Assembly: GCF_006345805.1 (NCBI RefSeq)
Contig: NC_043003.1
Span: 8,990,001-9,054,000 of the forward strand
DNA length: 64,000 nucleotides
From: Octopus sinensis
Lineage: Eukaryota
Direction of reading: 5' to 3'
The position numbers and the translations under genes are program-made. Positions 44,144 to 64,000 of the stretch are shown one piece after another (position 1 is the first letter of the stretch; each line of letters opens with the position of its first letter). The notes below the pieces were generated by a model. The model was given only the letters and a program-made list of their open reading frames with translations, did not search any database and was not told where the DNA came from.

Positions 44144-44174
<31 letters not shown>

Positions 44175-44293: not shown

Positions 44294-44355
<62 letters not shown>

Positions 44356-44492: not shown

Positions 44493-44524
<32 letters not shown>

Positions 44525-44974
44525 GAAGTGACTGAACAAATGAAAGAAAGTAGCACTTGTCATATTTGATAAAAGTTTCATATATTTTTAATGATGGTTT
44601 CAACATCACACAATCTAAAGTTTCATGTGTGCATAGAACATACCCCTCTCATCAGACGCTAGGAGCAAATATATAGATTAAACAACAATCTTTTCAGTTT
44701 CTGTTTTCCAAATTCACTCACAATTACTTGGTAAGACTGGGGTAAAAGAGACTTGCCCAAACTGTAGTGCTGTGGGATTGAACCTGAAACCACATAGTTG
44801 AGAAGTAAATCTCTCAACCACACAGCTCACACATCTGGGACATTGATGTTGATATACATGCTGATATTTTTGACCACATCTAAAACTAGGTCATCCACCT
44901 AATAAGTAAAGATTTTTTTCATCAACACATGTCAATCCCTGCCTCATAAACACACATGTTTCTCTGGCAGTATC

Positions 44975-45188
44975 AGTAGCACGCTGGGCGAAATGCTTAG
45001 CAGTATTTCGTCTGCCGCTACGTTCTGAGTTCAAATTCCGCCGAGGTCGACTTTGCCTTTCATCCTTTCGGGGTCGATAAATTAAGGACTAGTTACGCAC
45101 TGGGGTCGATATAATCGACTAAATCCATTTGTCTGTCCTTGTTTGTCCTCTCAGTGTTTAGCTCCTTGTGGGTAGTAAAGAAATAGGT
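44975..45188 (+). mobile_element. SINE family B monomer
   Basis: Matches family B consensus. Confidence 0.88.
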
Positions 45189-45232
45189 TTCTCTGTTTTG
45201 CCAATTTTTGTCCATTTTTTTTCCTTCTACAG

Positions 45233-45518
45233 CAGTGGTTTCCAAAGTGGGTGGTCCTCCCCACTCCTGGGGGTGGTGGAAAAAGGTCCAGAGGGGGATG
45301 TTGAAGAAAATTAGTGCGATAATAGAATGTAAACAACGACAAAATAATAGGTTAATTAGGTTAGTTTTTTTTTGTGAAATACAATTGCTTTGAATATGCT
45401 ACAGAGAGCGTTCTATGTTTGTGGTGTGGCGCATGGGAGAAGGACGGGGGAGGGGGCGATAGGGATGGGGACTGAGTGCCAAATGGGCAGCAGCCCTAAA
45501 AAAGTTTGGGAACCACTG
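45233..45518. mobile_element. hAT-type MITE
   Basis: TIRs CAGTGGTTTCCAAAGT / AGTTTGGGAACCACTG; 8-bp TSD TTCTACAG / TTCTACAC (7 of 8). Confidence 0.85.
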
Positions 45519-45558
45519 TTCTACACCTACTAAAAAAAAAAAAAAACTTATTCTTATA

Positions 45559-45930
45559 GGCGTAGGAGTGGCTGTGTGGTATGTAGCTTGCTTACCAACC
45601 ACATGGTTCTGGGTTCAGTCCCACTGCGTGGCACCTTGGGCAAGTGTCTTCTACTATAGCCTCGGGCCGACCAAAGCCTTGTGAGTGGATTTGGTAGATG
45701 GAAACTGAAAGAAGCCCATCGTATATATATATATATATATGTATGTTTGTGTGTCTGTGTTCGTCCCCCCAACATTGCTTGACAACCGATGCTGGTGTGT
45801 TTACGTCCCCGTAACTTAGCGGTTCGGCAAAAGAGACCAATAGAATAAGTACTAGGCTGCCAAAGAATAAGTCCTGGGGTTGATTTGCTCCAGTATGGCC
45901 GCAGTCAAATGACTGAAACAAGTAAAAGAG
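45559..45930 (+). mobile_element. SINE family A, young full-length copy
   Basis: Near-consensus with CpGs retained. Confidence 0.9.
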
Positions 45931-46637
45931 TCGAAAAAAAAGAGAGAGAGAGAGAGAGTTCTGTTCTGGAATAGATAAGTGCAAGTGTCCTTACACTTGG
46001 CATGTCTATCTCCCTCCCTTTTGTTATTCCTATTGTGTCTCTCTAACCTCGCCATCCCACACTCACTGTTTTGTTCGGTCTTTTGTTCCTCAAGAAGTAC
46101 AATCATTTGAAATTCTCTCCCTGCCCAGATTTCCTGCAGACACTGACATATGGCAGATGTTCAGTCAGCTGCTTCCGTCCTGTCTTCTCTCATACATTCT
46201 ATGAAGAGCATTCGCCTTTTACCGCTCTCACTTTTTAACAATTTATTTATCAAAATTAACTGGGAATTGATTCAGTTATTTTCCTCGTTAGCCACCGCTT
46301 TGCATTGGTTCCATTTGTTCCACAGAACATATGTATCCTAAAATAAGTAAATGAGTGGAAACTTTATCGGTGAGTGTGTTAAATTATAAGGCACTAAAAG
46401 AGAATGACTCTCCCCAGTACTAGGCTTACAAAGAATAAGTCCTGGGGTCGATTTGTTGGGCTAAAGGCGGTGCTCCAGCATGGCCACAGTCAAATGGCTG
46501 CAACAAGTAAAAGAGTAAGAGAGAATATGCTTCAACACACAAACTCACATAAAGAATCTGGCAAACCAAATCCCAAAACGATATATATATATATATGTGT
46601 GTGTGTGTACGTATGTATATATGTGTGTGTGTGTGTG

Positions 46638-46686
<49 letters not shown>

Positions 46687-47323
46687 TGTGTGTGTGTAAT
46701 TATTTTAACAATGGATTGCAATATCAGTAGAGTTTTGATAAAGTACAATGTAATATTTGGTTATATATTCTTTTATCTTTTACTGGTTTCTGTCCTTGGC
46801 CTGTAGACTGGCACCACCTTCAGGGCCTCATTGTTGATCAGATTAACCCCAGTGCTTCAGTACTTATTTTTGTCTGGTCCTTTTTTTTTTCATTTTGTAC
46901 ATTTTTAAAAATTGGCCAAGTTATTATAATTGTTTCTGCACTGGTCTTGTTTTATTTGTTGTTGTTGTTGCGTCAAAGTGAAAGTGTGTGGCTAAGTGGT
47001 TAGAGTATTTGGTTCTGTAAAGTTGTGAGTTCGATTCCCGATGGTATGTTGTATCCTTGAGCAAGACACTTTATTTCACATTGATCCAGTCCACTCAACT
47101 GGCAAAAATGAGTGTAAGCTGTGTAAGCTTTTCAACCACACAACAATCACGTCTGTGCCTCTGTGTCTAGCCATGGGGAAATATTATCTTGCTTAGAAAC
47201 AGGTGAGGTGTTGGCAACAGAAGGGGCATCCAACTGTAGAAAACCTACCCCAACAAATTCCTTTCTGGCTAATGCAAGCCTGGAAAAGTGGACTGTATAT
47301 GACGATGATGATAATGATGATGA

Positions 47324-47382
<59 letters not shown>

Positions 47383-47459
47383 CATACACAGGCGAGTACA
47401 TACGTGCAAAACAAGGTTGAAAAAATAGTACTCGAATACCAAAGGTAGAGTAATATACA

Positions 47460-47609
47460 TTTTATTTAAAGCTGCAAAATTATCACAGAAGTGTTACTCA
47501 GAGTTTCACGTTTCTCGATGTCAGGCAGTTGTGATGAATAACTGTCTGACAAACAGGAAAATTAAACTCTAATTAATGCTTCTGTGATAATCTTGCAGCT
47601 TTAATAAAA
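47460..47609. repeat. Degenerate inverted repeat of the same Penelope-like family as 42935
   Basis: TTTTATTTAAAGCTGC...GTCAGGCAGTT / AACTGTCTGAC...GCAGCTTTAATAAAA; decayed hammerhead cores on both arms. Confidence 0.65.
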
Positions 47610-47618
47610 AGTATATAA

Positions 47619-48003
47619 TCTCTATATATATAAAGCTGAAGTTGTCTGTGTATGGCAGGTTTGGTAGTCTTCAACTAAAACTATCTCCTCCGAGACCTTG
47701 CGGCGCAAGTTGACCAAAATTGAAAGTATGATAGAAGAAGGCTTTCTCTTCCTTCCATAGAATTCAAATTGGATCATGTTAACATCAAAAATTATTTACA
47801 TCAAAAAGGTGCTTTTTTTCTATGAAAATTCCTATTTTTTACGATTTTTTGACTGCTGTATCGTCACTTTTAGGTGTATTTCAACCAGAAAAATGTTCAC
47901 TTAAAGAGAATAACAAGCTACATAATGCAGAATTTTTACTTTTCAAAAATTCCAATTCTAAAGGGTCGAAACAAACCCGAGCAATGCCGGGTGATACTGC
48001 TAG
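47619..48003 (+). mobile_element. Non-autonomous Helitron-type element (same ends as 26479, different body)
   Basis: A|TCTCTATATATATAAAG ... ACCCGAGCAATGCCGGGT-GATACTG-CTAG|T. Confidence 0.8.
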
Positions 48004-48256
48004 TTGTTATATATAGTTGAAGATCATGGTGTATCTATTCCAAAAGTTACAAGACTTTATTGATTATGAAAAAATTTTGTTTTTATAATTTTTATAATTT
48101 TCTATTATATTTATACTTGAATAAAAAGTTCCGTGTTGTCTTATATTTATGAATATTTCGTTTTCTGTTTTAAAAAGTTTCACCTCTATATACCCAAATA
48201 TACAAACATAGATTTTGAAATCTCTGAAAGTTCTCTTTTATATTTTATTTTCACAG

Positions 48257-48440
48257 ACGCCGTCATCACTTGCTGAAGATGTTTCCAGTAGTGCAGTTCT
48301 TACACGGTTGGATGGGGATGGCCTCGTGGAACGAGGGAACTGGAGTGGACGGTTCGATTTCCTCATGTCCTTATTGGGGTATTCCGTGGGTCTCGGCAAC
48401 GTGTGGAGGTTTCCCTACCTAGCATACAGCAACGGAGGGG
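48257..48440 (+). CDS. SLC6 exon A (N-terminus + TM1): [11 protein letters not shown]...[37 protein letters not shown]
   Basis: Acceptor ttttattttcacag|ACG, donor GGGG|gtaagt; ends in phase 1; no usable ATG before TM1. Confidence 0.93.
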
Positions 48441-51400
48441 GTAAGTTATCTCCCTTGCACTCATTCACTCATTTTGTTTTTTGCTTCCTTATTATTCTCT
48501 CCCTTTATATGTTGTGCAAATAGCAGAGTGGTTGGTTGGCCTGTTAGAAATAGCAGCCAAATCCTCCTAATATCACACTTTACTGTCAAAGAAAATGTGA
48601 AGACGTTATTGGAGAATGTCTCAGACGTATTATGACTGAATAGAAGATGGAATGATCATGGGTGCGATAAATTTGATATAGGTCTGCTCATTCAACGCTG
48701 ATCTAGTGTCAAACAACAGCACGAAACAATAACAACGTTACAAATAGTTACTGGAACATTAAGATACACACACACAGAGTTGGGGTGTGGAGGCGCAATG
48801 GCCCAGTGGTTAGGGCAACGGACTCGCGGTCGTAGGATCGCGGTTTCGATTCCCAGACTGGGCGTTGTGAGTGTTTTTTTGAGCGTAAAAAACCTAAAGC
48901 TTCACGAGGCTCCGGTAGGGGCTGATGGCGATCCCTGCTGCACTCTTTCACCACAACTTTCTCTCACTCTTTCTTCTGTTGGCCTGCTTGCTTAGCCAGC
49001 GGGGTGGCGTCATTTGAAGGCTAAAACAATGCGAAGCGCATTGTGACCAGCGATGTGTAGCAACATCTGATGCTACACATCCACTCACAAGGCTTTGGTC
49101 GACCCGAGGCTATAGTAGAAGACACTTGCCCAAGGTGCCACACAGTGGGAATGAACCCGGAACCATGTGGTTGGTAAGCAAGCTACTTACCACACAGCCA
49201 TGCTTATTTTTAAAATGATATTGCTGGGTACATACGAGAAACCAGATCTGGCTGATTGAAGCATAAAATCAGTAAAATATTTCAGCTGGATCTGACCAGT
49301 TTAAATGCTAAAGGATTAAACATCATTTGTATAATTCGTTCCCTTTTCTCTCACTGTTTCTCTCTCTTCTACCAGTCTCACTTTATGTCTGTTTCTCTTT
49401 GTTTTAGGGGCGTTTCTTTTCCCTTTTATATTGATGTTGATATTAATTGGAACACCACTGATGTTTATGGAGCTTGCTTTCGGCCAGTTTGCATCTCTGG
49501 GTCCAGCTGCTATCTTCGACCGATTCTGTCCTTTATTTCATGGTAAGTACAATATATTTTCAAACTGTTATATCTTAACATGTTTATGATGTTGATGTTA
49601 ATACTGATTATGATGTTGATCGTCATCACCACCTTGATCATGATGACAATTATGATTATGATGATGACTGATGTTAACCCTTTCATTACTGTATTTATTT
49701 TGAGATGCTCTGTGTTTCTTTCAATTACTTTATATATAACAAAGAATTTAGTAAAATAACTTGGTTATCATTAAGCTAGTGTTAGGAACATAAATCATGA
49801 CTAAGGTTTGATGGAAGATTTTAATTCAGAACATGAAAACAAGATATTTGTACTCAGAGCCAGAGCCGGTTTCAGAATTGTTTTTCTATTATATATTTTG
49901 ACACTTTTGTTACCATATTTCTGTCGAGATGCTCTTTGTTTCTTTCAATTACTTTAAATATAACAAAGAATTTAGTAAAATAACTTAGTTATCATTAAGC
50001 TAGTGTTAGGAACATAAATCATGACTAAGGTTTGATGGAAGATTTTAATTCAGAACATGAAAACAAGATATTTGTACTCAGAGCCAGAGCCGGTTTCAGA
50101 ATTGTTTCTCTATTATATATTTTGACACTTTTGTTACCATATTTCTGTCGAGATGCTCTTTGTTTCTTTCAATTACTTTAAATATAACAAAGAATTTAGT
50201 AAAATAACTTAGTTATCATTAAACTAGTGTTAGGAACATAAATTGTGACTAAGGTTTGGTGGAAGATTTTAATTCAAAACTTATGAAAACAAGACATTTG
50301 TACTACAGAGCCAGAGGCGGTTTCAGCTGGATTGGTATCAAAAGGGTTAAGAATTGTTTCTCTATTATATATTTAACCCTTTTGTTACCATATTTCTGTT
50401 GAGATGCTCTATGTTTCTTTCAATTAATTTTAAATATTACAAAGAATTTAGTAAAATAACTTGGTTATCATTAAGCTAGTGTTAGGAACATAAATTGTGA
50501 TTGAGGTTTGGTAGTAGATTTTAATTCAAAACTTATGAAAACAAGACATTTGTACTCAGAGCCAGAGCTGGTTTCAGCCAGGTTGCATCAAAAGGGTTAA
50601 TCATGAGCATCAGAATAAGGATAATGAAGATAATGATGAACAGATGAACTTAGAAGCTATGAGATTCTATACAGTGATGTGAGCATGAATATGTTGATCT
50701 ATACACACACATACGCATGTAGTTACACTTAGACATACTGAAACACATTATGAAAAGGATGTGTGAATGAATAAATATATTTACGTAAGCTCAAAAGTTC
50801 ATGTCAACTGATATATATACCTAAACGTGAATATACATTTTTTTACATGATGATCATCATCATCGTTTAACGTCCGCTTTCCCTGCTAGCATGGGTTGGA
50901 CGATTTTGACTAAGGGCTGGCGAACCAGATGGCTGCACCAGGCTTCAATCTTAATCTGGCAGAGTTTCTACAGCTGAATGCCCTTCCTAACGCCAACCAC
51001 TCCGAGAGTGTAGTGGGTGCTTTTATGTGCCACCGGCATGGAGCCAGTCAGGCGGTACTGGCAATGGCCTCGCTCGAATCTTTAACACATGCCACCAGCA
51101 CAGGTGCCAGTAAGGCGATGCTGGTAACGATCACACTCGAATGGTGTCTTTTACATACCACCGGCATGGAGGCCAGGTAGCCGCTCTGGCAATGATCATG
51201 CTTGGATGGTGCTCTTACCTAAATTCAAATTCATTCTGCCATAAAAATAGCAAATTGAAACAATGGAATTCTTTTAATCTCTTGTCTTAATGGTTTATCC
51301 TTTATATTGGGAATCTGTATGGTCATCTGCTTACGAGGAGAGCGGTTTATTTCATTGACCGATTAAATAGAGTTGTTTGAAATGGCCATAATGCACTGAT

Positions 51401-54400
51401 ACCTGGACATCCTTGTTACTCAGGTGCTTTATCATCATCATCATCATCATCGTTTAACGTCCGCTTTCCATGCTAGCATGGGTTGGACGGTTCAACTGGA
51501 GTCTGGGAAGCCCGAAGGCTGCACCAGACCAGTCAGATCTGGCAGTGTTTCTACAGCTGGATGCCCTTCCTAACGCCAACCACTCCGAGAGTGTAGTGGG
51601 TGATTTTATGTGCCACCGACACAGGTGCCAGACGAGGCTGGCGAACGGCCATGCTCGGATGGTGTTTTTTACGTGCTACTGGCACGGAGGCCAGTCAATG
51701 CGGTACTGGCTACGGCCACGTTCGGATGGTTTTCGTATGTGCCACCGGCACTGGTACCACAAAGCTACAAATTCCATTAATGTTTGTCGAGTTTGCTTTT
51801 GATTTTGTCCATTTTGTCCATTTTGTCCATTTATATATATATTCCTGATCATACACTCTCAGACATTACCAAACATTCATCTAAAAATTTGAATTTGCAA
51901 TTAAGGAATACGAAGAAGATTCATTCCTCTTTCTTCATATTTTAATCTCTTTATCTTATCTCCTCAGATCAGTTCATCCTTGTGTGATGTTTTGTGTGTG
52001 TGTGTGTGTGTGTGTGTGCTTGCTTACTGCTCTGTTTTAGTGTTTGTCTTCCTCCATGTCTGTTGTTTGTTTACCAATATCTTCGTTGATCTCCCTAAAT
52101 TTGAATTAAATTTTTGCCTAATTTTCTGACATCTTTTCAGTCTTGTTTTTTGATGATGACCTTTTCTTGTTGCTGTTGTTTTTTTGTTTGACAACTGCGA
52201 TCCTCATTCTTTCATTAATTCTTTCTTTCTTTCTTATCTTTCCATACTATTTTTACTCTCGTTCTTTCAACCACCACCACCACCACCACCACTACCACCA
52301 CATTAAAATCAACATCATCACCATCGACACCATCTCCCTCTCCCTGCCAATAAAACAAGGATATCCAACTCTACTGCCACTACCAAGCTGTGACAAAAGT
52401 TATAATCGCTGTCACTACCATCAACACCACAATCGTATTCACCCCACCCTCCACTATCACCACCATCACCTCCACCAGCAGTACTGCCACCATCACCACC
52501 ACCATCACTTCCATTATCACCATCACCACTACCACCATTACCACCATCACCACCACCATCACCATAATCGCCACCATCACCACCACCATCACTACCACCG
52601 CTACCACCACCTATTTCTTTACTACCCACAAGGGGCTAAACACAGAGAGGACAAACAAGGATAGACAAATGGATTAAGTCGATTATATCGAACCCAGTGC
52701 ATAACTGGTACTTATTTAATCGACCCCGAAAGGATGAAAGGCAAAGTCGACCTCGGCGGAATTTGAACTCAGAATGTAACGGCAGACGAAATACGGCTAC
52801 GCATTTCGCCCGGCGTGCTAACGCTTCTGTCAGCTCGCCGCCTTTACCACCTCTACCACCACCACCACCACCACCACCACCATCACCACCACCACCATCG
52901 CCACCAAAACCACCCCTCCCCCCACCATTACCATCATCATCAACAACATCACTGAACTACCATCACCATCACCCTTTTTTTACTGTTCCTTTTTTTTTCT
53001 AGGTCTTGGTATTGCCATGATATGTGTATCAAGTCTGGTGGCTGTCTACTACACAGTAATTATAGCCTGGACAATTCTGTATCTGTTCATGTCGTTTACA
53101 TCGGAACTTCCTTGGGAAACCTGTGGAGAAGAATGGAGAACACAATGTAAGTGGAAGGATCTTTTAATTATGTCTTTATATGATTTATATGTGAAGGCTC
53201 ATGGCTCAGTGATTAGAGAAGGGGTTGGTGAACAGGGGTAAAAATGAAATTCTTGAGGGTATGTGGATTCATTAGGCATGAGTGAAATTATATAAAACAC
53301 ATGCCTTTCATCCTTTCGTAGTCGATAAATAAAGTACCAGTTGAGTACTGGTGTCGATCTAATCAACTAGCCCCCTCCTCCAAAATTTCAGGCCCTGCAC
53401 CTAGAGTAGAAACGATTATTATTATTGAGTTAGAGAGCAGTGCATGCCATCAAAGTGACACTGGGGTAAAATATACAAAGCCCAGTATACCCATCATGAC
53501 TACCCGTCTGATAAGGGTACACTAGGCACATGCATCACAACCATATGTGTGCGACATGGTGAGCTCATATCACGATAAACAACACATGACCTTGCAGGTG
53601 GGGCTCAGTTAGAATTTTCTTCTCACCCATGTTTCCAGAGGTGAATTATTTGAATCCCAAAGAATTCCTCACAACACATGGCTATGATGTTCTCCCACTA
53701 CTTCCGCTCATGATCAGAGATGCACATATCATCGGCCAGAAAGGGACATGCTCAACTGGTTACTGTCAAGCAAATCTGTGGTATTGAGCAGAATATTTGC
53801 TGTAGCCCATCTTTTATACCAAGACAAAATAGTGTACATGGTAACACTTCCAATCAGTTAAGATCAGAAGCCACGAGAGCCACTGCCTGGTACAGTATCA
53901 GAGCCTTTATTATTATTATTATTATTATCATCATCATCATTATTATTGTTATTATTATTATTGTTGTATTTTTTGTTTTGCAGTTTGTTACTCTTTCAAA
54001 GAAGCAGACGCTTGTGCCCAAATAAACGGCAGTGTATATTATAATCAAACTTGCTTCAACGCGACGTATGCTGCATCAGAAAACATAGTAGAACTTGCCA
54101 AAAATTCATCAATACGACATGTTCCAGCTCAAGACTTTTTTGAGTAAGTTCATCAACCTTAGCTATTATAGGTTTGTTTGTTCCTTCTCGAGCCATGCCT
54201 GGCTCATAAGGGCTGGTTTCCCGGTTTCCTTGGCGTATAGGTTCCCCTTCTGGATAGGACGCCGCTCCGTCGCAGGTGAGCTGCAAGATGCAGGAGGAAA
54301 AAGTGAGAGAAATTCGTGGCGAAAGAGTCAGCAGAAGTTCGCCATTACCTTCTGCCGGAGCCGCGTGGAGCTTAGATGTTGCTAAGCTCTTGGCAAAATT

Positions 54401-57400
54401 TGATGTAGATTCTCTTCTCAACTCTCTCGGCTCAATGATTACATGCTACACACTTTCCTTCCAAGCACTGCTGTGAACAGCAGAAGTGAGCTACAACATT
54501 AAAATTTAGTGTGCATGCATGGTAGAGTTGAAAGTCTATCTGTGCCAAGTGACTTCACTCTGTATGATTTAGTTTCATTGCTATGGCAACAGTCCGGATA
54601 CTTATGGATCAGACCATGTATATACATACATATATATATCAAATAAGTACCAATTGAAAATTGGAGTTGATGTAATTGACTTACCTCCTCCCCAAAATTG
54701 CTGGCCTTGTGCCAAAATTTGAAACCATTACATATGGAGGGGCACATATTTGGGGTACCATCTTTTTTTTATTCCTTTATTTGTTTCTGTCATTGGACTG
54801 CAGCCATGCCTTGTGAGTGGATATGGTAGATGGAAACTGAAAGAAGCCTGTCGTATATATGTATATATATAAGTGTGTTGTCCCCCCCAACATCACTTGA
54901 CAACTGATGCTGGTGTGTTTACGTCCCCGTAACTTAGCGGTTCGGTAAAAGAGTCCGATAGAATAAGTACTAGGCTTACAAAGAAGTCCTGGGGTTGATT
55001 TGCTCAACTAAAGGCGGTGCTCCAGCATGACCGCAGTCAAATGACTGAAACAAGTAAAAGAGTATATGCGTGCGTGTGTGTGTGAACATAGAGTATGATG
55101 TTCACCGTTAATGTTCAACGTTGTTAATTGCAGGCGCCATGTCTTGAACATATCTTCTGGTATTGAACACTTGGGTGATATCAGGTGGCAGGTTGTCCTC
55201 TGTCTTCTTTGTGCATGGACTTTGACGTTTTTCTCTCTCAGCAAAGGAGTGAAATCAACAGGAAAAGTAAGTCACTCTCCATCTTTGCACTTTTCGATTT
55301 ATATATGCATCATTGCTGCTTTTTTTTATGTATTCCTTCCTTCCTCCCTCCCTCCCTCCCTCCCTCCCTTACTCCTCCCCCTCTCTTCCTTCCTTCCCTC
55401 CTTTCCTGCCTTCTTCCCTCCCTCCCTCCTCCTCCCCCTCCCCTTCCTTCCATCCTTCCATTCTCCCTCCCTCCCTCCCTTCCTCCCTCCTTCCCTTCTT
55501 CTCTTCGTTCCCCCTTCTTCCCTTCCTTCCTCCCTTCTTCCCCTCCTTCCTCCCTTCCTTTCTTCCTCCCTTCCTTCCTTCCTTCCTTCCTAAATCCCTC
55601 CCTCTCTCCCTTCCCCCCTTCCTTCCTTCCTTCCTTCCTTCCTTCCACCCACCCTCCTGCGGAGTTTCAGGCTTTGTACCTATTGTAGAAAGGAATACTT
55701 AGCCTGGTAATAACTGTCTTGAGAAACTGAGGAACTTTAAGCAAAAGAATTGGAAGAAATATAACAATCACTTTACTGATGACGATGACAATGATGACAA
55801 TAATATTCACAACAGAACTGATGATTATTTTGCAGTCTGTATTGAAAATAAGGAGCCAGTTAATGTTGAGATGATATGGAATACAGTGGAACCTTTAATT
55901 TGTCTCTGAAGGCTGTTCATCATCTGAAGTGCTTGTAAACCAAAACGATTTTTCCCATAAGAAATTCGAGAAATGGCACAACATATTCAAGCAGGGATGT
56001 ATACTGAGTGAAAACTTAAAGTCTACACCAACTGATGTTCCCTGGTGGTACTCCCAGCTTGTCGCCAACTGTTGTCTTCTTCTTCCAATCAGGACTCACG
56101 CCATTAGCCACAAAGAATATTCTCTAATTTGAGCCTACTCTAAGCTACTTAGAGTGCGTTTGGCAACTTGAAGATCCACCCACCACACGCGATAGACTGG
56201 CGGTTGCATGGGCGCAAAAGCTACGTTGTTATCCTCATTCCGTAAACGGTGGCTTTTAACGGGTGGAGAGCTGAACCATCCTGGGGTACAGAGGATTCGC
56301 AATCTAGACTAGGGTCTGAAAGTTTACCACACCATACTGGGTTACACCATGGTTCCTCTGCTTTGTGGCAGAAGTAGGAAGAACGAGTGAAAGTTGTGGT
56401 GAAAGAGTACAGCGGGGTTCACCACCCATCCCCGCTGGAGCCTTGTGGAGCTTTGGTGTTTTTGCTCAATAAACACTCACAATGCCAGGTCTGGGAATCG
56501 AAACCACGTTCTTATGACCATGAGTTCACTGCCCTAACCACTGGGCCATTGTGCCTCTGCCAACTGTTGTTGTCAGCTTGTATTTTTGTTATTCAAAACA
56601 CTGTTCATCACCTGAAATATTTTATGTTTGAGAAATTGTTCATAAACCATTTGTTCGTGATGAGAGATGTTTGTAAATCTAGACTCCACTGTATAAAGTT
56701 GTAAGCAAGTAAAAATAATTAAAATCATCTTTTAAAACTTCTTTTTACAGGTGGTGTACTTCACTGCACTATTCCCCTATGTTGTACTTTGTATCCTGTT
56801 TGTTCGAGGTGTGACGTTACCTGGTTCAATGAAAGGAATTATATTTTACGTCACTCCAGAGTTCCACTTATTAAAATCTGCTAAGGTATGTTGGATTTAA
56901 TTTCACTTCATAAGCAATATTTTCACAAATGTATATTCTTTGCACATAATGAATTTTTATTCAGTTAACCAACTCATTGCAACATCAGTGATTTGTCAGT
57001 CAGTATTTTAGTAGATTTTATCTTTTCATGCGGTTGCTAATGGATACTTGCTGCTGATGAAGACCAAAGAGGTAGAAATGCACATTTAGCTAAACCACCA
57101 CTGCGGCTGGATGACTTCTTCCTGCTGCTCATATGTTTTTGCATGTTTTTAACAGAGTGCATCTGCAAGAGATATTATCTCAGGACAAATACTGCAGTTA
57201 ATTTGGTTTTTCAGTTTCTATTGACCAAATCCACTCACAAGGCTTTGGTTGGCCTGAGGCCATAGTAGAAGACACTTGCCAATGGTGCCATGCAGTGGGA
57301 CTGAACCTGGAACCATGTGGTTGGGAAGCAAGCTTCTTACCACACAGCCACTCCTATATACATATATATATATATGTGTGTGGCCTGCTCGCTTAGCCAG

Positions 57401-58351
57401 CGGGGTGGCATCATTTGAAGGCTAAAACAATGCGAATGCATTGTGACCAGCGATGTGTAACAACATCTGATGGTCTGGTCGGTCACGTGATATATATATA
57501 TCACTCAAACGTATATACATACACATATATGATGATGACTATATATATATTTGAGAGCACAACGCAGATATATTGTCATAATTTCAGATCTTATTAACCT
57601 TTTAGCATTTAAAACGGTCATATCTGGCCCAAGTATTCTACTAATTATATGTTCGAACTGGCTAGATTCAGCATCTCATACCTACCCTGCAATGTCATTC
57701 TAAAAATAAAAAATCCAATCACATTTTCGAAATCTCTAAGCCATGAGATAATATGCATGATCACTTTTGTAAAATGTGAATGAATAAGCATTACATTTGA
57801 CAGAGAAGCTGAATGCTAAAGCTAATGTGTTGGGCCACAGAGCAAGGTACATAACTCTGTTTGCTCCAGATTTTCAAACTCAGTTTTAAATTATCTCCAC
57901 ATTTCTATTTCTACTTTATGGTTAGCAACAAGTGTCCTGCCATAAAAAAAAAACAAAAACAATTGGTCTGACAATAAATCATTCCATGAGCTGGCAGAAA
58001 TGCTTAGCGGTATTTCGTCTGCTGTTACAATATATATATATATATATATATTTCGTTTTTGGATTTGGTCTGCAAGATTCTTTATGTGAGTTCGTGTGTT
58101 GAAGCATATTCTGTTGTACCTGGGAAGACTCATTTTCTTTTTGTGCCTTATAATGTAACACTTATTTCTTTTTTTTTTTTTCCTAAAAAATTTTCATTGT
58201 GTCTTGCAACCTTTTCAAGACTATTGAAAAGGTTGCAAGACGCAATGAAAATTTTAGGAAAATAAAAATAAGAAATAAGTGGAAATTTTACTGGTGAGTG
58301 TGTTACATTATAAGGCACAAAAAGAAAATGACTCTCCTTAGACACAACAGA

Positions 58352-58411
<60 letters not shown>

Positions 58412-60849
58412 TATATATGTTGTATAACCCATGCCAGAATGGAAAACGGACATTAAAGGATGATGGTGATGATATACATGTATATCTGAAGAAGCTATAA
58501 GGTGATGCACTATATCTCATAGCAGAAACAGCTGTAGACCAATGCATTTCCCTACATAATTTCTTGTTACCTTGTCATTCATTTACTTTTATTTTACTCT
58601 CAGTTCTCAACTGATGCTTTTTTGTCTGAAGCATTCGTATATTGAGTTCTAACACCAGGTTGTTAGTTTTGCTATGCATGAATGAAACATTAAAATACTT
58701 ACCTGTCTTATCATTTATGCATTACAGGTGTGGAAAGAAGCAGCTGTGCAAATATTTTTCTCACTTAGTCCAGCCTGGGGCGGACTGATAACACTTGCCA
58801 GTTATAACAAGTTCCATAACAACTGTTATAAGTAAGTATATCACCTTGTTTCTTTATTTTTTACTTGTTTCAGTCATTTGACTGCGGCCATGCTGGAGCA
58901 CCGCCTTTAGTCAAGCAAATCGACCCCAGGACTTACTCTTTGTAAGCCTAGTACTTATTCTATCGGTCTCTTTTGTCGAACCACTAAGTTATGGGGACGT
59001 AAACACACCAGCATCAGTTATCAAGCGATTTTGGGGGGGACAAACCCAGACACACAAACATATACACACACATACATATATATGTATACATATATACGAT
59101 GGGCTTCTTTCAGTTTCCGTCTACCAAATCCACTCACAAGGCCTTGGTCGGCCCGAGGCTATAGTAGAAAACACTTGCCCAAGGTGCCACGCAGTGGGAC
59201 TGAACCCAGAACCATGTGGGTTGGTAAGCTGGCTACTTACCACACAGCCACACCTGTGCTTATCTTTTACCTGTTACGTGTTTCAATCTTTGGGCTGTGG
59301 CCATGCTGGGGCACTGTGTTGATGGGTTTAGTTGAACAAATTGATCCTGTGCCTATTTTTTAAAGTTTGGTCTTTAGCACTAATTCTGTTGTTCTCTTTG
59401 GTTGAACTGCTAAGTTAAGAGGATGTAAACAAACTGACATGAGAGATTTGAGCTCTGGCACTACATTCATGTGGTTTGACTATCACAGGAAAGAATTTCA
59501 AACATATTTCCAAGCTGAGCCAACTGGCAAGAGATACTCTGGTCAGGCTAAGGATGATATGGTGGGATAATATCAATACAGTAATTCCTCGACTATTGCG
59601 GGTGTACCCTTAACATAGTTCTCAGGGAGATTCAGCATGACACACAATGTGACAAGGCTGGCCCTTTGAAATACAAGTATAACAGGCTGTTCCGTTGATC
59701 GGTTCAACTGGAACCCTCGTCGTCGTAACCAACGGAGTGACAACTATGAATATGTGTGTATACATGTGTGAATGCATGGATGAATTAATGATAAAGGGTG
59801 TCATTTGTCCTCTTTCAGTGATCTGTGTGTGTGTGTCTGTGTGTTTGTGCATGTGTATGCATACTTCATAAACTTAGCAGATTTAATCTCTCTGTCAAAT
59901 TTTGAATTCAACAAATGTGTTTTTGTCTTTTCCTTTCCTTCAGAGATGCATTGATTGTATCAATTGGCAACATTTGTACCAGCATTTTCGCTGGTTTTGT
60001 TATATTCTCTATCATTGGTTACTTGGCAAATGAACTCAATATGCCGGTTGACAAAGTTGTTGATCAAGGTTAGTCTATCTTTATTTATTTCATGCTGTCT
60101 TTTCTACTGCTGTTTGTTATGATTTTTTTTGTCATAATTGTTATTGTGTGTGAAAGGTCAATCTGCTGCACCGTTAAGCATAAATTGAAGGTCAAGAGTT
60201 TATCAAAACAAAAATACCTACCTAATGTACTGAATTCAAGCACAGTATATGCTAGGAATAAGAATCATATGGGAATGGTTTACTGGGGTAATCCATGAAT
60301 AAAAGTTGGTGTAAATATTTTGAACATTGTAAACAAGTAGTTTACAAACTAACATAAGCCATGAGCAGCAATATATTGTTTAGTAAAGTGTTAAACACCT
60401 GTGGTATGCAAATTAATTGCTTCAGTTCTCTGTAGCTACAGGTTTTGTTGAGTAAAAAGCTCCCCTGATGGTGCCACATAAAAAGCACCCCTGATGGTGC
60501 ACCATAAAAGCACCTGTGCTAGAGTTATGTAAAAGCACCTGTGCTGGCGCCATGCTAAAAACACCCAGTACATTCTGGAAAGTCATTGGTGCTGTGAAAG
60601 ACATCCAGCTGTAGGAAACATCCCAAAGCAGACACTGGAGCATGGTGCAGTCCTTTGACTCATTTGATCCTTGTCAAACTGTCCAACTCATGCTAGCATG
60701 GAACATGGGTGTTAAACGATGATGATGATAATGATGTGTGTGTAATGTCACTCTCTCTACCCCTCTCTCCATTTATGTGAGTGATCATCTATTTATGTTT
60801 GTATGTGTAGTGGTTCTCTCTCTGTTTATGTGTATCTAGTTATGTTTGT

Positions 60850-60896
<47 letters not shown>

Positions 60897-61235
60897 GTGT
60901 GTATTTCTGCATCCACACATGCATGCATGTGTGGATGCATTTTCCCCCAGTGTCAAAAAATACTGTCACCAAAACAGGTGAAACATCCTCTCAGCCACAC
61001 CAAATCGTCAATGCCCAAGCAGGTGTGCCCATTCGCCTCACTTGACACGCACAGTGGCACACAATACAGGTACATCTTGAGCGACATTTTAATTTTATGC
61101 ATTCAACCTTCTATTTTGCCAGGTGCTGGTTTAGCATTCATTGTATACCCTGATGTTGTAACCAGGTTACCAATATCTCCATTATGGTCCTTCCTCTTCT
61201 TCTTCATGCTGTTGACTCTTGGAATGGGCAGTGAA
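48257..61235 (+). CDS. SLC6/NSS Na+(/Cl-)-coupled amino-acid transporter, glycine transporter (GlyT1/GlyT2)-like; partial spliced CDS of 9 exons, TM1-TM8, 5' and 3' exons missing
   Basis: Exons of 184+135+144+160+133+135+104+125+113 = 1233 nt join in frame without stops; all introns GT-AG with matching phases. Motifs: [86 protein letters not shown]. Gly at the TM1 monoamine-Asp position and Trp in TM6 point to the glycine-type subgroup; exact orthologue not assignable by eye. Confidence 0.95.
48787..49075 (+). mobile_element. SINE family E head with alternative 3' part
   Basis: A- and B-box-like head; 3' part GCTTAGCCAGCGGGGTGGC...CATCTGATG also seen at ~57380-57480. Confidence 0.8.
49408..49542 (+). 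CDS. SLC6 exon B (TM2): [45 protein letters not shown]
   Basis: gttttag|GG ... CATG|gtaagt; 135 nt, phase 1-1. Confidence 0.95.
49674..50600. mobile_element. Four-unit tandem array of a piggyBac-like MITE
   Basis: Anchor GAGATGCTC at 49702, 49926, 50150, 50401; TTAA-CCCTTT and AAAGGG-TTAA ends at 49674, 50350, 50373, 50600. Confidence 0.85.
50854..51218 (-). mobile_element. Retroposon family C
   Basis: Same architecture, three VNTR units. Confidence 0.88.
51431..51756 (-). mobile_element. Retroposon family C
   Basis: Same architecture. Confidence 0.88.
52270..52970. repeat. (CAC/CAT)n microsatellite interrupted by a family B SINE
   Basis: Seen directly. Confidence 0.9.
52611..52842 (-). 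mobile_element. SINE family B monomer within a (CAC/CAT)n tract, 160 nt upstream of exon C
   Basis: Matches family B consensus, reverse strand. Confidence 0.9.
53003..53146 (+). CDS. SLC6 exon C (TM3, start of EL2): [48 protein letters not shown]
   Basis: ttttctag|GT ... CAAT|gtaagt; 144 nt, phase 1-1. Confidence 0.95.
53984..54143 (+). CDS. SLC6 exon C2 (EL2): [54 protein letters not shown]
   Basis: Absent from the ORF track. ttttgttttgcag|TT ... TTTGA|gtaagt; 160 nt, phase 1-2, exactly bridging exons C and D; supplies the second conserved EL2 Cys. Confidence 0.92.
54808..55064 (+). mobile_element. SINE family A, 5'-truncated, ends 69 nt before SLC6 exon D
   Basis: GCCTTGTGAGTGGAT ... CAAGTAAAAGAGTA. 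Confidence 0.88.
55134..55266 (+). CDS. SLC6 exon D (end of EL2, TM4): [44 protein letters not shown]
   Basis: ttgcag|G ... AAA|gtaagt; 133 nt, phase 2-0. Confidence 0.95.
55333..55646. repeat. Polypyrimidine (CCTT/CCCT)n tract
   Basis: Almost purine-free on the plus strand. Confidence 0.95.
56751..56885 (+). CDS. SLC6 exon E (TM5): [45 protein letters not shown]
   Basis: ctttttacag|GTG ... AAG|gtatgt; 135 nt, phase 0-0. Confidence 0.96.
57050..57090 (+). ncRNA. Decayed hammerhead motif in SLC6 intron E-F
   Basis: GCTG-CTGATGA-A-GACC(AAAGA)GGTA-GAAA-TGCACAT-T-TAGC. Confidence 0.5.
57208..57356 (-). mobile_element. SINE family A, 5' half
   Basis: Reverse complement of head to GAAACTGAAA. 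Confidence 0.8.
57595..57825. mobile_element. Degenerate piggyBac-like MITE (26434 family)
   Basis: TTAACCTTTTAGCATTTAAA ... TGAATGCTAAAG; shared internal motifs CCTACCCT-CAATGTCATTCTAAA. Confidence 0.6.
58106..58355. repeat. Long fold-back inverted repeat (5-nt loop) in SLC6 intron E-F
   Basis: ...GTGTCTTGCAACCTTTTCAA-GACTA-TTGAAAAGGTTGCAAGACGC...; outer arms also match. A split copy of this family lies at ~46340-46590. Confidence 0.85.
58477..58547 (+). ncRNA. Hammerhead motif (intact core, weak stem I) in SLC6 intron E-F
   Basis: CTGAAGA-A-GCTATAAGG...CTCATAGC-A-GAAAC-AGCT-GT-A; perfect palindromic stem III ACAGCTGT; same family as 35648. Confidence 0.55.
58728..58831 (+). CDS. SLC6 exon F (TM6): [34 protein letters not shown]
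   Basis: attacag|GTG ... TATAA|gtaagt; 104 nt, phase 0-2. Confidence 0.96.
58851..59254 (-). mobile_element. SINE family A, full length, starts ~20 nt after SLC6 exon F
   Basis: Matches family consensus, reverse strand. Confidence 0.9.
59944..60068 (+). CDS. SLC6 exon G (TM7): [41 protein letters not shown]
   Basis: tttcctttccttcag|A ... CAAG|gttagt; 125 nt, phase 2-1. Confidence 0.95.
60450..60735 (+). mobile_element. Older family C relative with shorter repeat units
   Basis: Repeats of GGTGCCACATAAAAAGCACC and the same (ATG)n-type tail. Confidence 0.65.
61123..61235 (+). CDS. SLC6 exon H (EL4, TM8): [38 protein letters not shown]
   Basis: ttttgccag|GT ... GAA|gtaagt; 113 nt, phase 1-0. 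Confidence 0.95.
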
Positions 61236-61278
61236 GTAAGTTGCTTTGGCTTCTACTTTTTAACTATTTTATTTGAAA

Positions 61279-61662
61279 CTAGCAGTATCGCCCGGCGTTG
61301 CTCGGGTTTGTAAGGGAAATAACTATAAAGCATTTTTAGAGAGTTATAGCAAAAAAATGCATTAAAAATGGAAAAAAAATTATAGTAAATTTTTTTTAAA
61401 TAGTTGACTCATCGTAGACATTTTTAGAGAGTTACTTCCCTTATATAATAGCGAAAAATGCATTAAAATAGAAAAAAATGATGGTAAATATTTTTTTTAA
61501 TCGTAGACTCATCGTAGACACGCACTAATACCCAGAAGGGCTCGATATGAATCACGACTATAAGATACCCGGTTTTGGTTAAACTGCACCACAAAATGTG
61601 GGAGTAGTTAGGAATCTAAATCGTAGGAGACAGACACACAACCTTACTTTTATATATAAAGA
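61279..61662 (-). mobile_element. Non-autonomous Helitron-type element, same family as 26479-26875
   Basis: Reverse complement of the same termini (A|CTAG-CAGTATCGCCCGGCGTTGCTCGGG ... TTTTATATATAAAGA|T) and body. Confidence 0.8.
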
Positions 61663-61680
61663 TTATCTTGTAACAGTTCA

Positions 61681-62088
61681 GAGCCAGGGATTGGCTCCCA
61701 TGCTGGTGGCACGTGAAAAGCACCATTTGAGCATGATTGTTGCCAGTGTCGCCCTTCCGGCACATGTGTCGGTGGCACGTGAAAAACAACATTCGAGCGT
61801 GGTCGTTGCCAGTGTCGCCGGACAGGCTCCCATGCAGGTAGCACGTAAAAAGCACCTTTTCAGCATGGTTGTTGCCAGAACTGCCTGACCAGCCCTCATA
61901 CTGGTGTCATGTAAACGCACCCACCACACTCTGTGGTTGGCGTTAGGAAGGGCATCCAGCTGTAGACACTTTGTCAGATCAGATTGAGCCTGGTGTAGCC
62001 TCTAGCTTGCCAGTCCTCAGTCAAATCGTCCAACCCATGCCAGCATGGAAAGTAGACACTAAACGATGACGACGATGATGATGATGAT
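61681..62088 (+). mobile_element. Retroposon family C
   Basis: Unit starts at 61705, 61771, 61837, 61903 (66-bp period). Confidence 0.88.
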
Positions 62089-62544
62089 AGATACATATAG
62101 ATATATATTCATAGATGGATAGATAAATGATAGAAAATGAAATCAATGATATCCTTTATTTAAAATCGCTACAATTGTTTTGTCGTATTTTTACAGTCAA
62201 ACCGTCCAACCCATGCCAGCATGGAATGTTGATGATGATGATGATGATGACATATGCATACATATTTATATTTATACACATAATTGTACATTTAGCTACT
62301 TATCATCTAAAATCATAGATGAATTTGTCAGTGGGCAGCTTAGCTTAATGATAAAGCACTTAGTCGGAGTTTTTGAGGTATGTGGGTTTGTGTCTCATGG
62401 CTGGTTGTTGACAAATTTTTCTGCTTGGTAAGAGTAATTTGCCCAGTATTTCTGCTGTTCTAATGGCAATTCTGTGTTTGAAAAAATATCATCTAATATG
62501 TACTGTTGAATACACAATTTGACGCATTTAAAAACAAATGTTAG

Positions 62545-62893
62545 TTTGTAGTAAAGATTGTTTGCCAACTTAAAATGGCATTCCTGGTTTAGGACGAATG
62601 TTGCTGTAGTTTAGCCCCAGGAGACATCGTCTCCAGCTGGCTACATGATACGATCTGTGTCTTTAAATTTTCAAACAAGGGAATCTAGCACCCCCACTCA
62701 GCTAAAAGCAATATCTGTGTATCGTGCTTTCTGGGTTATTTCCCTTCATCAGCACAGAATAATTGCTAGATTCCTTTGTTTGAAAATGTAAGGACATGTA
62801 GCCAGCTGGAGACGATGTCTCCTGGGGCTAAATTACAGCAACATTCGTCCTAAACCAGGACTGCCATGTTATGTTGGCAATCTTCACTACAAA
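62545..62893. repeat. Inverted repeat, ~130-145-bp arms, 73-nt loop, downstream of SLC6 exon H
   Basis: TTTGTAG...CCTGGTTTAGGACGAATGTTGCTGTAGTTTAGCCCCAGGAGACATCGTCTCCAGCTGGCTACATG versus its reverse complement at 62764-62893. Confidence 0.9.
62714..62758 (-). ncRNA. Degenerate hammerhead motif in the loop of an inverted repeat
   Basis: TCTGTG-CTGATGA-AGGG(AAATAA)CCCA-GAAA-GCACGA-T-A-CACAGA; stem I 6 bp, stem III not paired. Confidence 0.45.
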
Positions 62894-63224
62894 GTACTGT
62901 TCCTGAATATCTCACATTGTGAGATTTAAAAATAGTAATTTTCCAAAATGTTAGTTTGTTTATATTTACACACAGAGTTATACATACGTCAGTATATACA
63001 TACATACATACATGCATACAAACAGACAACGAGTGGACAATTGAAAGAAAAGGGCACTTAACATATTTAGTATGAGCTACAAGTATTGTTTAAAGTTTCT
63101 TGATTCAGTTCCCAGCTACCTCAAGTTTCGCATTTAAGCCATCATCAGACAATGGCTTAACAGGCCAAAGCTTCAAAGTCATGGTCAACATTATTCTTGT
63201 TTAAGAATAGCTAAATATATATAG

Positions 63225-63470
63225 CCTTGACTGGCTTCCGTGCCAGGGGCACGTAAAAAGCAGCAACTGATTATGGCCGTTGCCAGCCTCGCCTGGCACC
63301 TGTGTCGGTGGCACATAAAAAGCACCCACTACACTCATGGAGTTGGCGTTAGGAAGGGCATCCAGCTGTAGAAACACTGCCAGATCAGACGAGCCTGGTG
63401 CAGCCTCCTGACTTCCCAGACCCTGGTCAAACTGTCCAACCCATGCTAGCATGGAAAACAGACGTGAAAC

Positions 63471-63504
<34 letters not shown>
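63225..63504 (+). mobile_element. Retroposon family C
   Basis: Same architecture. Confidence 0.85.
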
Positions 63505-63541
<37 letters not shown>

Positions 63542-63640
63542 CACAAACATATACACACACATACATATATATATAATATATATAATATATATACACAAAC
63601 ATATACACACACATACATATATATATATATATACATATAT

Positions 63641-63800
63641 ACGACGGACTTCTTTCATTTCTTCCGTTTACCAAATCCGCTCAAAAAGCTTTGGTCGACC
63701 CGAGGCTATAGTAGAAGACACTTGCTCAAGGTGCCATCCAGTGGGACTGAACCAGGGACCATATGGTTGGTAAGCAAGCTACTTACCACACAGCCACACC
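63641..63800 (-). mobile_element. SINE family A, 5' half
   Basis: Reverse complement of head. Confidence 0.8.
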
Positions 63801-63843
63801 TATATATATATATCATATATATAATATATATAATATATATATA

Positions 63844-63897
<54 letters not shown>

Positions 63898-63898
63898 C

Positions 63899-63932
<34 letters not shown>

Positions 63933-63952
63933 ATAATATTATATATATATAC

Positions 63953-63984
<32 letters not shown>

Positions 63985-64000
63985 ATATATATAATATATA

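What the first reader, a model, noticed from the sequence alone, without database searches (positions are those of the whole stretch)
54808..59254. Inverted SINE pair hugging exons D-F: circRNA or exon-skipping geometry with an endless reading frame
Seen: a plus family A copy ends 69 nt before the exon D acceptor, and a minus copy begins ~20 nt after the exon F donor; they are closely complementary over ~250 nt outside the microsatellite. Exons D+E+F = 372 nt, phase 2 at both ends. Back-splicing gives ...TAT AA|G CGC CAT... with no stop around the circle and an in-frame ATG at 56829. Skipping gives GA|A in frame, deleting TM4-TM6. Established: inverted Alu-like pairs drive back-splicing, and ADAR antagonises it. 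Caveat: SINE density makes chance pairing plausible, though this proximity to both splice sites is striking.
Basis: partly seen in the sequence, partly recalled or inferred. Interest (0 to 1): 0.7.

Follow-up and report, generated by a model that had tools for sequence, protein, structure and literature searches.

The report
Inverted SINE pair bracketing three exons
Two young copies of a very common octopus-type SINE lie in opposite orientation just outside three exons of an SLC6 transporter gene. The layout can promote circular RNA or exon skipping, but it looks like two chance insertions, and no expression data could be checked.

Summary
The sequence observation is correct. A 5'-truncated plus copy (54806-55062) and a full-length minus copy (58845-59263) of the window's commonest SINE bracket exons D-F of an SLC6 (GlyT2/PROT-like) transporter gene. 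The plus copy ends about 71-74 nt before the exon D acceptor. The minus copy starts 13-27 nt after the exon F donor. The arms can form about 248 bp of RNA duplex, and this survives in a fold of the whole 5.8-kb stretch. Exons D+E+F total 372 nt, the circle has no stop in the native frame, and skipping is in frame.

The pair does not look selected. Each arm is about 4% from the family consensus. Their 7.6% mutual divergence equals the sum, they share no derived changes, and complementarity stops at the SINE ends. The family has 26 copies in 64 kb, and 18 inverted pairs bracket exons of this gene. Random re-placement gives such a pair in 61% of trials. Only the closeness to both splice sites is rare (0.3-0.8%). 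The endless frame applies to about one exon block in three.

The likeliest outcome is intronic dsRNA that ADAR hyper-edits, with back-splicing or skipping as a minor by-product. No RNA data were reachable. It is an ordinary new instance of a known kind, of low interest.

The parts
54806..55062 (+). Family-A SINE copy on the sense strand. It is 5'-truncated (consensus positions ~119-402, no tRNA-like head) and lies in intron C-D. It ends ~71-74 nt before the exon D acceptor and forms the upstream arm of the duplex.
   Evidence: blastn with the full copy; alignment of 14 copies; 3.6% from the window consensus; inverted-repeat blocks.
58845..59263 (-). Family-A SINE copy on the antisense strand. 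It is full length (head, body, internal TA/TG microsatellite, conserved tail) and lies in intron F-G. Its tail starts 13 nt after the exon F donor and its complementary part 27 nt after. It forms the downstream arm of the duplex.
   Evidence: 4.0% from the window consensus.
55134..55266 (+). Exon D (133 nt). It encodes the end of extracellular loop 2 and TM4 of an SLC6 transporter. Its acceptor has a weak pyrimidine tract (gttgttaattgcag|G).
   Evidence: Splice sites and translation; tblastn of SLC6 homologues; Pfam SNF. TM assignment is from my knowledge of SLC6 topology.
56751..56885 (+). Exon E (135 nt), encoding TM5. It contains the in-frame ATG at 56829-56831, which has a weak initiation context (T at -3, A at +4).
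58728..58831 (+). Exon F (104 nt), encoding TM6 ([10 protein letters not shown]...SYNKF). Its donor is AA|gtaagt.
53984..54143 (+). Exon C (160 nt, extracellular loop 2 with N-X-S/T sites). This is the donor used in the skipped isoform.
59944..60068 (+). Exon G (125 nt, TM7). It has a strong acceptor (ttttcctttccttcag|A) and is the acceptor used in the skipped isoform.
   Evidence: end corrected from 60069 to 60068 by reading the donor AAG|gttagt.
57209..57355 (-). Head-only fragment of family A in intron E-F. It shares only ~35 nt with the plus arm and is a weak competing partner. Pairing with it would bracket D-E (268 nt, not a multiple of 3).
45556..45927 (+). Full-length plus copy 13 kb upstream. 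It is an even longer partner for the minus arm (405 nt aligned, 85%) if it lies in the same transcript. The exon at 48257 starts with an acceptor, so upstream exons must exist.
59264..59434 (-). Older, diverged SINE of a related subfamily. Its A-rich tail abuts the 5' end of the young minus copy, so the young copy probably inserted into that tail.
   Evidence: (68% identity).
54770..54806 (-). Reversed SINE-tail fragment directly 5' of the plus copy. It can form a local ~35-bp stem with the plus copy's own tail, making it a small competitor within the same intron.
   Evidence: alignment row 54760_55075.

Best explanation
Two independent, fairly recent retrotransposition events placed copies of the window's most abundant SINE in opposite orientations in introns C-D and F-G of an SLC6 (glycine/proline-transporter-like) gene. 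This much is shown by the sequence. In the pre-mRNA the two copies can pair into a ~250-bp, ~92% matched duplex that loops out exons D-F. That is predicted thermodynamically. In an octopus-type transcriptome the main fate of such a duplex is inferred to be promiscuous A-to-I hyper-editing by ADAR, which weakens the pairing, followed by ordinary linear splicing. Back-splicing of 58831 to 55134 (a 372-nt circle), and/or skipping of D-F with the excised lariat then circularised, would be a minor and probably non-adaptive by-product. The stop-free circular frame follows from arithmetic on coding exons and is not evidence of a coding circle.
For: - **Independent insertions:** the arms are 3.6% and 4.0% from the consensus of 12 window copies. 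Their pairwise divergence is 7.6%, which is the sum. They share 0 derived substitutions, and 5 of 17 private changes are at CpG. Complementarity stops at the SINE boundaries, and the plus copy lacks the head that the minus copy has.
- **Abundance:** 26 copies or fragments (13 plus, 13 minus) make up 11.5% of the window. This matches the 11.6% SINE content reported for O. vulgaris (PMC13282606).
- **Many similar pairs:** 18 inverted pairs of at least 70 nt bracket exons of this gene. A bracketing pair arises in 61% of random re-placements.
- **Duplex strength:** 248 intermolecular bp, -435.5 kcal/mol, ddG -303, longest uninterrupted helix 48 bp. In the MFE of 54144-59943, 242 bp are retained.
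- **Published context on editing:** octopus shows the strongest hyper-editing signal among 19 species, mostly in neighbouring inverted repeats, and ADAR unwinds nearly all copies of such transcripts (PMC5625713).
- **Published context on circRNAs:** circRNAs in O. vulgaris are at overall low levels, with 296 high-confidence cases in 18 tissues (PMC9699675). The presence of an inverted pair does not by itself mean that a circle is produced (PMC4201285).
Against: - The closeness to both splice sites is rare under uniform placement (P = 0.003-0.008). It would be rarer still if insertions near splice sites are normally purged.
- This pair is much closer to its splice sites than the other 17 pairs, and it is the energetically dominant long-range structure. 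Measurable back-splicing or skipping therefore cannot be dismissed.
- No RNA data were available, so both the ADAR editing and the splicing outcome are inferences.
- The window consensus may not be the true source sequence of the subfamily, so the ages are approximate.
Confidence: 0.75

Rival explanations
1. The pair drives production of a real, reasonably abundant 372-nt exonic circRNA (exons D-E-F) by intron-pairing back-splicing. ADAR activity may tune it by tissue, so that low ADAR gives more circle and less transporter mRNA.
For: - The duplex is long and stable and is the dominant long-range structure.
- The arms lie 74 and 27 nt from canonical splice sites, which is tighter than chance in 99% of re-placements.
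- No strong competitor of the same family lies within either flanking intron.
- Exon D has a weak acceptor.
- Inverted repeats of 30-40 nt suffice for circularisation in reporter constructs (PMC4201285).
Against: - circRNAs are few and at low levels in octopus (296 in 18 tissues; PMC9699675), although inverted SINE pairs must be very numerous.
- The arms contain low-complexity microsatellite and G-U pairs, both of which can inhibit circularisation (PMC4201285).
- The upstream arm is transcribed 3.8 kb before its partner, so intron C-D may be spliced out first.
- The arms show no sign of selection.
- The minus arm has an alternative, longer partner at 45556-45927.
Confidence: 0.15
2. The duplex mainly promotes skipping of exons D-F. 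This gives an in-frame mRNA for a transporter that lacks TM4-TM6 and is either regulatory (for example dominant negative) or simply a loss-of-function isoform.
For: - The skip junction is in frame.
- The exon C donor and exon G acceptor are strong, while the exon D acceptor is weak.
- Looping-out by complementary introns is a known route to skipping, and skipping and circularisation are linked through an exon-containing lariat (PMC4479058, listed; the mechanism is from my own knowledge).
Against: - Removing three TM helices, including the TM6 substrate and ion site, would invert the topology of TM7-12. The product is therefore most likely misfolded. This is an inference from SLC6 topology.
- No transcript evidence exists.
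- The ADAR and kinetic objections raised against the circRNA rival apply here too.
Confidence: 0.08
3. The circle is translated by rolling-circle translation from the ATG at 56829, producing concatemers of TM4-TM6.
For: The 372-nt circle has no stop in the native frame and has one in-frame ATG. Rolling-circle translation of infinite-ORF circles has been shown with synthetic circles in human cells (PMC4639774).
Against: - The stop-free frame is automatic. It applies to 8 of 28 exon blocks of this gene.
- The ATG has a weak context.
- No IRES or other initiation element was found.
- The product would be a repetitive, hydrophobic, membrane-inserting polypeptide.
- This reading requires that the circle exists in the first place.
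Confidence: 0.01
4. The two arms come from an inverted segmental duplication, or from gene conversion that maintains complementarity, and not from independent SINE insertions.
For: The arms are among the more similar pairs in the window (rank 6 of 66).
Against: - Homology ends exactly at the SINE boundaries.
- One copy is 5'-truncated and the other is full length.
- The internal microsatellites differ in length.
- The plus arm is closer to copies at 32655 and 45555 (6.2%) than to its partner (7.6%).
- The arms share no derived substitutions.
Confidence: 0.01

Closest known systems
Alu-pair-flanked human circRNA loci (ZKSCAN1, HIPK3, EPHB4; Liang & Wilusz 2014, PMC4201285) and the general intron-pairing model (Jeck 2013; Zhang 2014; Ivanov 2015, cited from my own knowledge)
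   Same: Inverted copies of an abundant ~300-400-nt SINE sit in the introns immediately flanking a block of 1-3 exons. The splice sites are canonical, the predicted circle is a few hundred nt, and ADAR is expected to antagonise the pairing.
   Different: No back-splice junction has been observed here. The SINE is an octopus-type family with an internal microsatellite and is unrelated to the 7SL-derived Alu. The arms are unusually close to the splice sites (74 and 27 nt). The host lineage has exceptionally high ADAR activity and few circRNAs.
Hyper-edited intronic inverted repeats in octopus (Porath et al. 2017, PMC5625713)
   Same: Neighbouring inverted copies of a repeat lie in one pre-mRNA and form a long, nearly perfect dsRNA. 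This is the class of structure that accounts for most hyper-editing.
   Different: Editing at this particular locus was not and could not be examined here.
Infinite-ORF circular RNAs translated by rolling circle (Abe et al. 2015, PMC4639774)
   Same: The circle length is a multiple of 3, has no stop codon, and contains an in-frame ATG.
   Different: Those were designed circles. Here the property follows from joining coding exons, and there is no evidence of either a circle or translation.
SLC6A5 (GlyT2), SLC6A7 (PROT) and SLC6A9 (GlyT1) transporters
   Same: These are the best solved-structure matches (E 4e-141 to 7e-129). Pfam SNF scores 515 bits.
   Different: Orthology was not established. 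Only 9 exons (about 411 aa, TM1-TM8 region) lie in the window, and the N- and C-termini were not found.

Membership tests
Dispersed SINE family ('family A', octopus-type, presumed tRNA-derived) | Many dispersed copies in both orientations with a common consensus and defined ends | tested here: met
   26 copies or fragments in 64 kb, 13 on each strand. Alignment of 14 copies shows a shared head, body, internal microsatellite and conserved tail GACTGAAACAAGTAAAAGAG.
Dispersed SINE family ('family A', octopus-type, presumed tRNA-derived) | 5' head derived from a tRNA (A and B boxes for RNA polymerase III) | tested here: inconclusive
   A B-box-like GGTTCAGTCCCAC and an A-box-like TGGCTGTGTGGTAAG are visible. 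However, ARAGORN finds no tRNA and Rfam gives no tRNA match even at E<=10 on 58800-59300.
Dispersed SINE family ('family A', octopus-type, presumed tRNA-derived) | Target-site duplications flanking each insertion | tested here: inconclusive
   Flanks of 11 copies were inspected. No clear duplications could be read, because the A-rich tails and microsatellites obscure the ends.
Intron-pairing (complementary-sequence) circRNA locus | Inverted complementary sequences in the two introns that immediately flank the circularised exons | tested here: met
   248 bp, -435.5 kcal/mol, retained in the fold of the full 5.8-kb stretch.
Intron-pairing (complementary-sequence) circRNA locus | Canonical acceptor upstream and donor downstream of the block | tested here: met
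   ttgcag|G at 55134 and AA|gtaagt at 58831.
Intron-pairing (complementary-sequence) circRNA locus | Observed back-splice junction reads or an RNase R-resistant product | not testable with these tools
   No RNA-seq access. The protein database holds no close cephalopod homologue of this gene (best hit 65% identity), so assembled transcripts could not be screened. The published octopus circRNA list is not among the supplementary files held.
Infinite-ORF (rolling-circle translatable) circRNA | Length divisible by 3, no in-frame stop, in-frame start codon | tested here: met
   372 nt, 0 stops, ATG at 56829. The base rate is 8 of 28 exon blocks.
Infinite-ORF (rolling-circle translatable) circRNA | Evidence of translation (junction-spanning peptide or ribosome footprint) | not testable with these tools
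   No such data available.
SLC6 / sodium:neurotransmitter symporter (Pfam SNF, PF00209) | Match to the SNF profile above the curated cut-off | tested here: met
   515 bits against a cut-off of 27 for the 411-aa exon concatenate. Exons D-F alone score 186.5 bits and cover profile positions 161-284. PDB best hits are GlyT2, PROT and GlyT1.

The most novel reading that the evidence does not exclude
The SINE pair acts as an ADAR-gated splicing switch in a neural transporter gene. Where ADAR activity is high the duplex is edited apart and full-length mRNA is made. Where ADAR is low the duplex holds, and exons D-F are looped out into a 372-nt stop-free circle and/or skipped, which lowers transporter output. 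In the extreme version, the circle is translated round and round.
Probability: 0.03. Interest if true: 0.6.

Novelty: new member of a known kind. Interest (0 to 1): 0.2.

Why it matters
If the circle or skipped isoform were shown to exist and to respond to ADAR, this would be a clean natural test case in a cephalopod. The open question is how extreme RNA editing trades off against repeat-driven back-splicing. The locus has a very compact, well-defined geometry in a neural transporter gene.

As it stands it is one of an estimated order of a hundred similarly tight inverted-SINE pairs in a SINE-rich genome. That figure is my rough extrapolation from a per-locus probability of about 0.5%. The locus mainly illustrates how readily such geometries arise by chance.

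Tried and rejected
- **Protein database search.** I searched the large protein database with exons D-G to find cephalopod transcripts or isoforms. The best hit was only 65% identical and there was no close homologue. Searches with back-splice or skip junction peptides were therefore not worth their cost and were not run.
- **Published circRNA list.** I looked for the O. vulgaris circRNA list. The supplementary text gives only the total of 296, and the list itself is not among the files held.
- **Metagenome scan.** I scanned with a degenerate pattern for the exon F end plus donor, hoping for another octopod. It returned only a distant relative (L001, 78-85% nucleotide identity in exons, short introns, no SINE A) and a more distant SLC6 gene (L002). 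This says nothing about whether the SINEs are conserved among octopods.
- **tRNA origin of the head.** Rfam and ARAGORN gave no support.
- **Target-site duplications.** I tried to read these to prove independent insertion, but they could not be resolved.
- **Segmental duplication or gene conversion.** Rejected as the origin of the arms.
- **Competing partners.** The head-only minus fragment at 57209-57355 shares only about 35 nt with the plus arm. The local reversed-tail stem at 54770-54806 spans about 35 bp. Neither displaces the long duplex in the MFE.
- **A paper search that failed.** The term 'SINE' mostly matched 'sinensis' in the A. fangsiao genome paper, so that result was of no use.


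Full report
**Observation**

The region was read directly and searched for inverted repeats. Three collinear blocks pair 54808-54876 with 59074-59142 (69 nt, 90%), 54878-54984 with 58937-59043 (107 nt, 93%), and 54984-55059 with 58859-58934 (76 nt, 95%). The break between the first two blocks is an internal TA/TG microsatellite of different length in the two copies.

The exon bounds were checked by translation and splice-site inspection:

| Exon | Coordinates | Length |
|---|---|---|
| D | 55134-55266 | 133 nt |
| E | 56751-56885 | 135 nt |
| F | 58728-58831 | 104 nt |
| D+E+F | | 372 nt |

- The back-splice junction reads TAT AA|G CGC.
- Read over two turns of the circle, the native frame has no stop, while the other two frames have 14 and 16.
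- The ATG at 56829 is in frame.
I measure 74 nt (71 to the tail end) upstream, and 27 nt (13 to the start of the SINE tail) downstream.

**The gene**

- tblastn of database homologues places nine exons between 48257 and 61235 on the plus strand.
- Their concatenate scores 515 bits on Pfam SNF/PF00209.
- It is closest to solved GlyT2, the proline transporter and GlyT1 (E 4e-141 to 7e-129).
- Removing them deletes the TM6 substrate and ion site, and it removes an odd number of helices. A skipped product would therefore most likely be transport-dead and misfolded (inference).

**The repeat**

- Searching the window with the full minus copy finds 26 copies or fragments, 13 on each strand. They make up 11.5% of the window.
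- Published SINE content for Octopus vulgaris is 11.6% (PMC13282606).
- An alignment of 14 copies shows a head with B-box-like GGTTCAGTCCCAC, a body, an internal microsatellite, a C-run and a conserved tail.
- Tools did not confirm a tRNA origin for the head. That part rests on the motifs and on the literature on octopus SINEs (Ohshima and Okada 1994, cited in PMC4824008).
- The plus copy is 5'-truncated at about consensus position 119. The minus copy is full length.

**Are the arms special?**

- Outside the microsatellite, the plus arm differs from the window consensus at 3.6% of sites and the minus arm at 4.0%.
- They differ from each other at 7.6%, which is the sum.
- They share no derived substitution, and 5 of the 17 private changes fall at CpG sites.
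- The plus arm is closer to the copies at 32655 and 45555 (6.2%) than to its partner.
- Homology stops at the SINE ends.
- This is the signature of two independent insertions of a young subfamily decaying neutrally. It is not the signature of duplication, conversion or selection for pairing.
- Using the published calibration for O. vulgaris (JC 0.065 at about 18 My), about 4% suggests roughly 10 My. This is only a rough inference. It predicts that one or both copies may be lineage-specific.

**Pairing strength**

- Co-folding the arms gives 248 intermolecular base pairs and -435.5 kcal/mol. That is 303 kcal/mol better than the arms folded alone. The longest uninterrupted helix is 48 bp.
- When the whole 5.8-kb stretch from the exon C donor to the exon G acceptor is folded, 242 of these pairs remain.
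- The small local competitors are the reversed tail fragment at 54770-54806 and the head-only copy at 57209-57355. They do not displace the long duplex.

**Chance**

- Re-placing the 26 copies at random 20,000 times gives an inverted pair that shares at least 150 nt and brackets an internal exon in 61% of trials.
- Both arms lie within 200 nt of their splice sites in 5% of trials.
- A pair as tight as the observed one occurs in 0.3-0.8% of trials.
- In the real sequence, 18 inverted pairs of at least 70 nt bracket exons of this gene between 44 and 64 kb. The D-F pair ranks fourth by score but is far closer to its splice sites than any other.
- The minus arm also has a longer potential partner at 45556-45927.
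- The closeness is therefore the one unusual feature. At about 0.5% per locus, a SINE-rich genome with tens of thousands of genes should still hold on the order of a hundred such cases (my extrapolation).
- The donor-side closeness has a partial mechanical explanation. An older, diverged SINE (59264-59434) lies at the same site, and the young copy appears to have inserted into its A-rich tail. Such tails are favoured targets for LINE-mediated insertion (from my own knowledge).

**The endless frame**

Any block of coding exons whose total length divides by three is stop-free around the circle. After correcting exon G to 125 nt, 8 of the 28 internal blocks of this gene qualify. Among the 18 real inverted pairs, 5 bracket such a block. 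The ATG has a weak context. Rolling-circle translation has been shown for designed circles (PMC4639774), but nothing here points to it.

**Likely mechanism**

- The established model is that pairing of flanking intronic repeats brings a downstream donor near an upstream acceptor. Repeats of 30-40 nt suffice.
- Efficiency depends on repeat content, on slow splicing of the flanking introns and on the exons themselves. The mere presence of a pair does not predict a circle, and ADAR is expected to oppose it (PMC4201285).
- In octopus, hyper-editing is the strongest among the species compared. It is concentrated in neighbouring inverted repeats, and most transcripts of such regions are edited (PMC5625713).
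- circRNAs are at overall low levels in octopus, with 296 high-confidence cases in 18 tissues (PMC9699675).
- I therefore rank ADAR hyper-editing of an intronic duplex, followed by normal splicing, as the main fate. Back-splicing or skipping would be a minor by-product.
- My estimates are about 15% that a circle is made at a level worth calling real, about 8% for a meaningful skipped isoform, and about 1% for translation of the circle.

**What could not be done**

- No RNA-seq data and no other octopod genomes were reachable.
- The protein database contains no close homologue of this gene (best hit 65% identity).
- A metagenome scan returned only a distant relative with the same intron positions, short introns and no SINE A.

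**Verdict**

The sequence description is accurate. The locus is an ordinary instance of a well-known geometry, formed by chance insertions of an abundant SINE, and is notable only for how tightly the arms hug the splice sites. Function is unproven and improbable. Interest is low.

Noticed in passing
window 58106-58355 (intron E-F): A ~125-bp near-perfect foldback hairpin, with RNA MFE -136 kcal/mol and z = -20 against shuffles. It is flanked by (TA)n runs, and partial copies occur elsewhere in the window (for example 46515-46596). It looks like a MITE-like foldback repeat and is a second strong dsRNA in the same pre-mRNA.
   Followed up: partly
window 55320-55650 (intron D-E): A ~330-nt CT-rich (CCTT)n-like tract begins about 55 nt after the exon D donor. 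On the transcript it is a long pyrimidine tract that could bind PTB-type splicing repressors. No test was made.
   Followed up: no
window 59264-59434: An older, ~32% diverged minus-strand SINE of a related subfamily. Its A-rich tail abuts the 5' end of the young minus copy, and tail-like sequence also lies between the young copy and the exon F donor. This suggests the young SINE is nested in the older tail.
   Followed up: partly
window 54770-54806: A ~37-nt reversed SINE-tail fragment lies directly 5' of the truncated plus copy. Its origin is unclear. It does not fit twin priming, because the inverted piece is the 3' tail.
   Followed up: partly
window 44000-64000: 18 inverted-repeat pairs of at least 70 nt bracket exons of the SLC6 gene. 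Examples are 44964-45188 with 52609-52833 (225 nt, 91%, around exons 1-2) and 51431-51701 with 63224-63491 (272 nt, 87%).
   Followed up: yes
window 58848-58872: The reverse-complemented SINE tail creates a strong acceptor-like motif (tttctttattttttacttgtttcag) 41 nt after the exon F donor. Every minus-strand copy of this family carries the same motif, so the family may be prone to exonisation or may act as a splice-site decoy.
   Followed up: no
L001 (JAAUYG010008427.1), 3717 nt: A metagenome-collection contig that encodes a distant relative of the same SLC6 gene. Exon F is 97% identical at the protein level and 85% at the DNA level. Intron positions match for exons E to H, introns are 0.7-1 kb, and there is no SINE A. 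The source organism is unknown.
   Followed up: partly
window 48257: The first SLC6 exon found (TM1) begins at an acceptor and has no upstream Met, so at least one more 5' exon lies upstream. It was not located. Whether the SINE copies at 45.5-46.5 kb are intronic depends on this.
   Followed up: no
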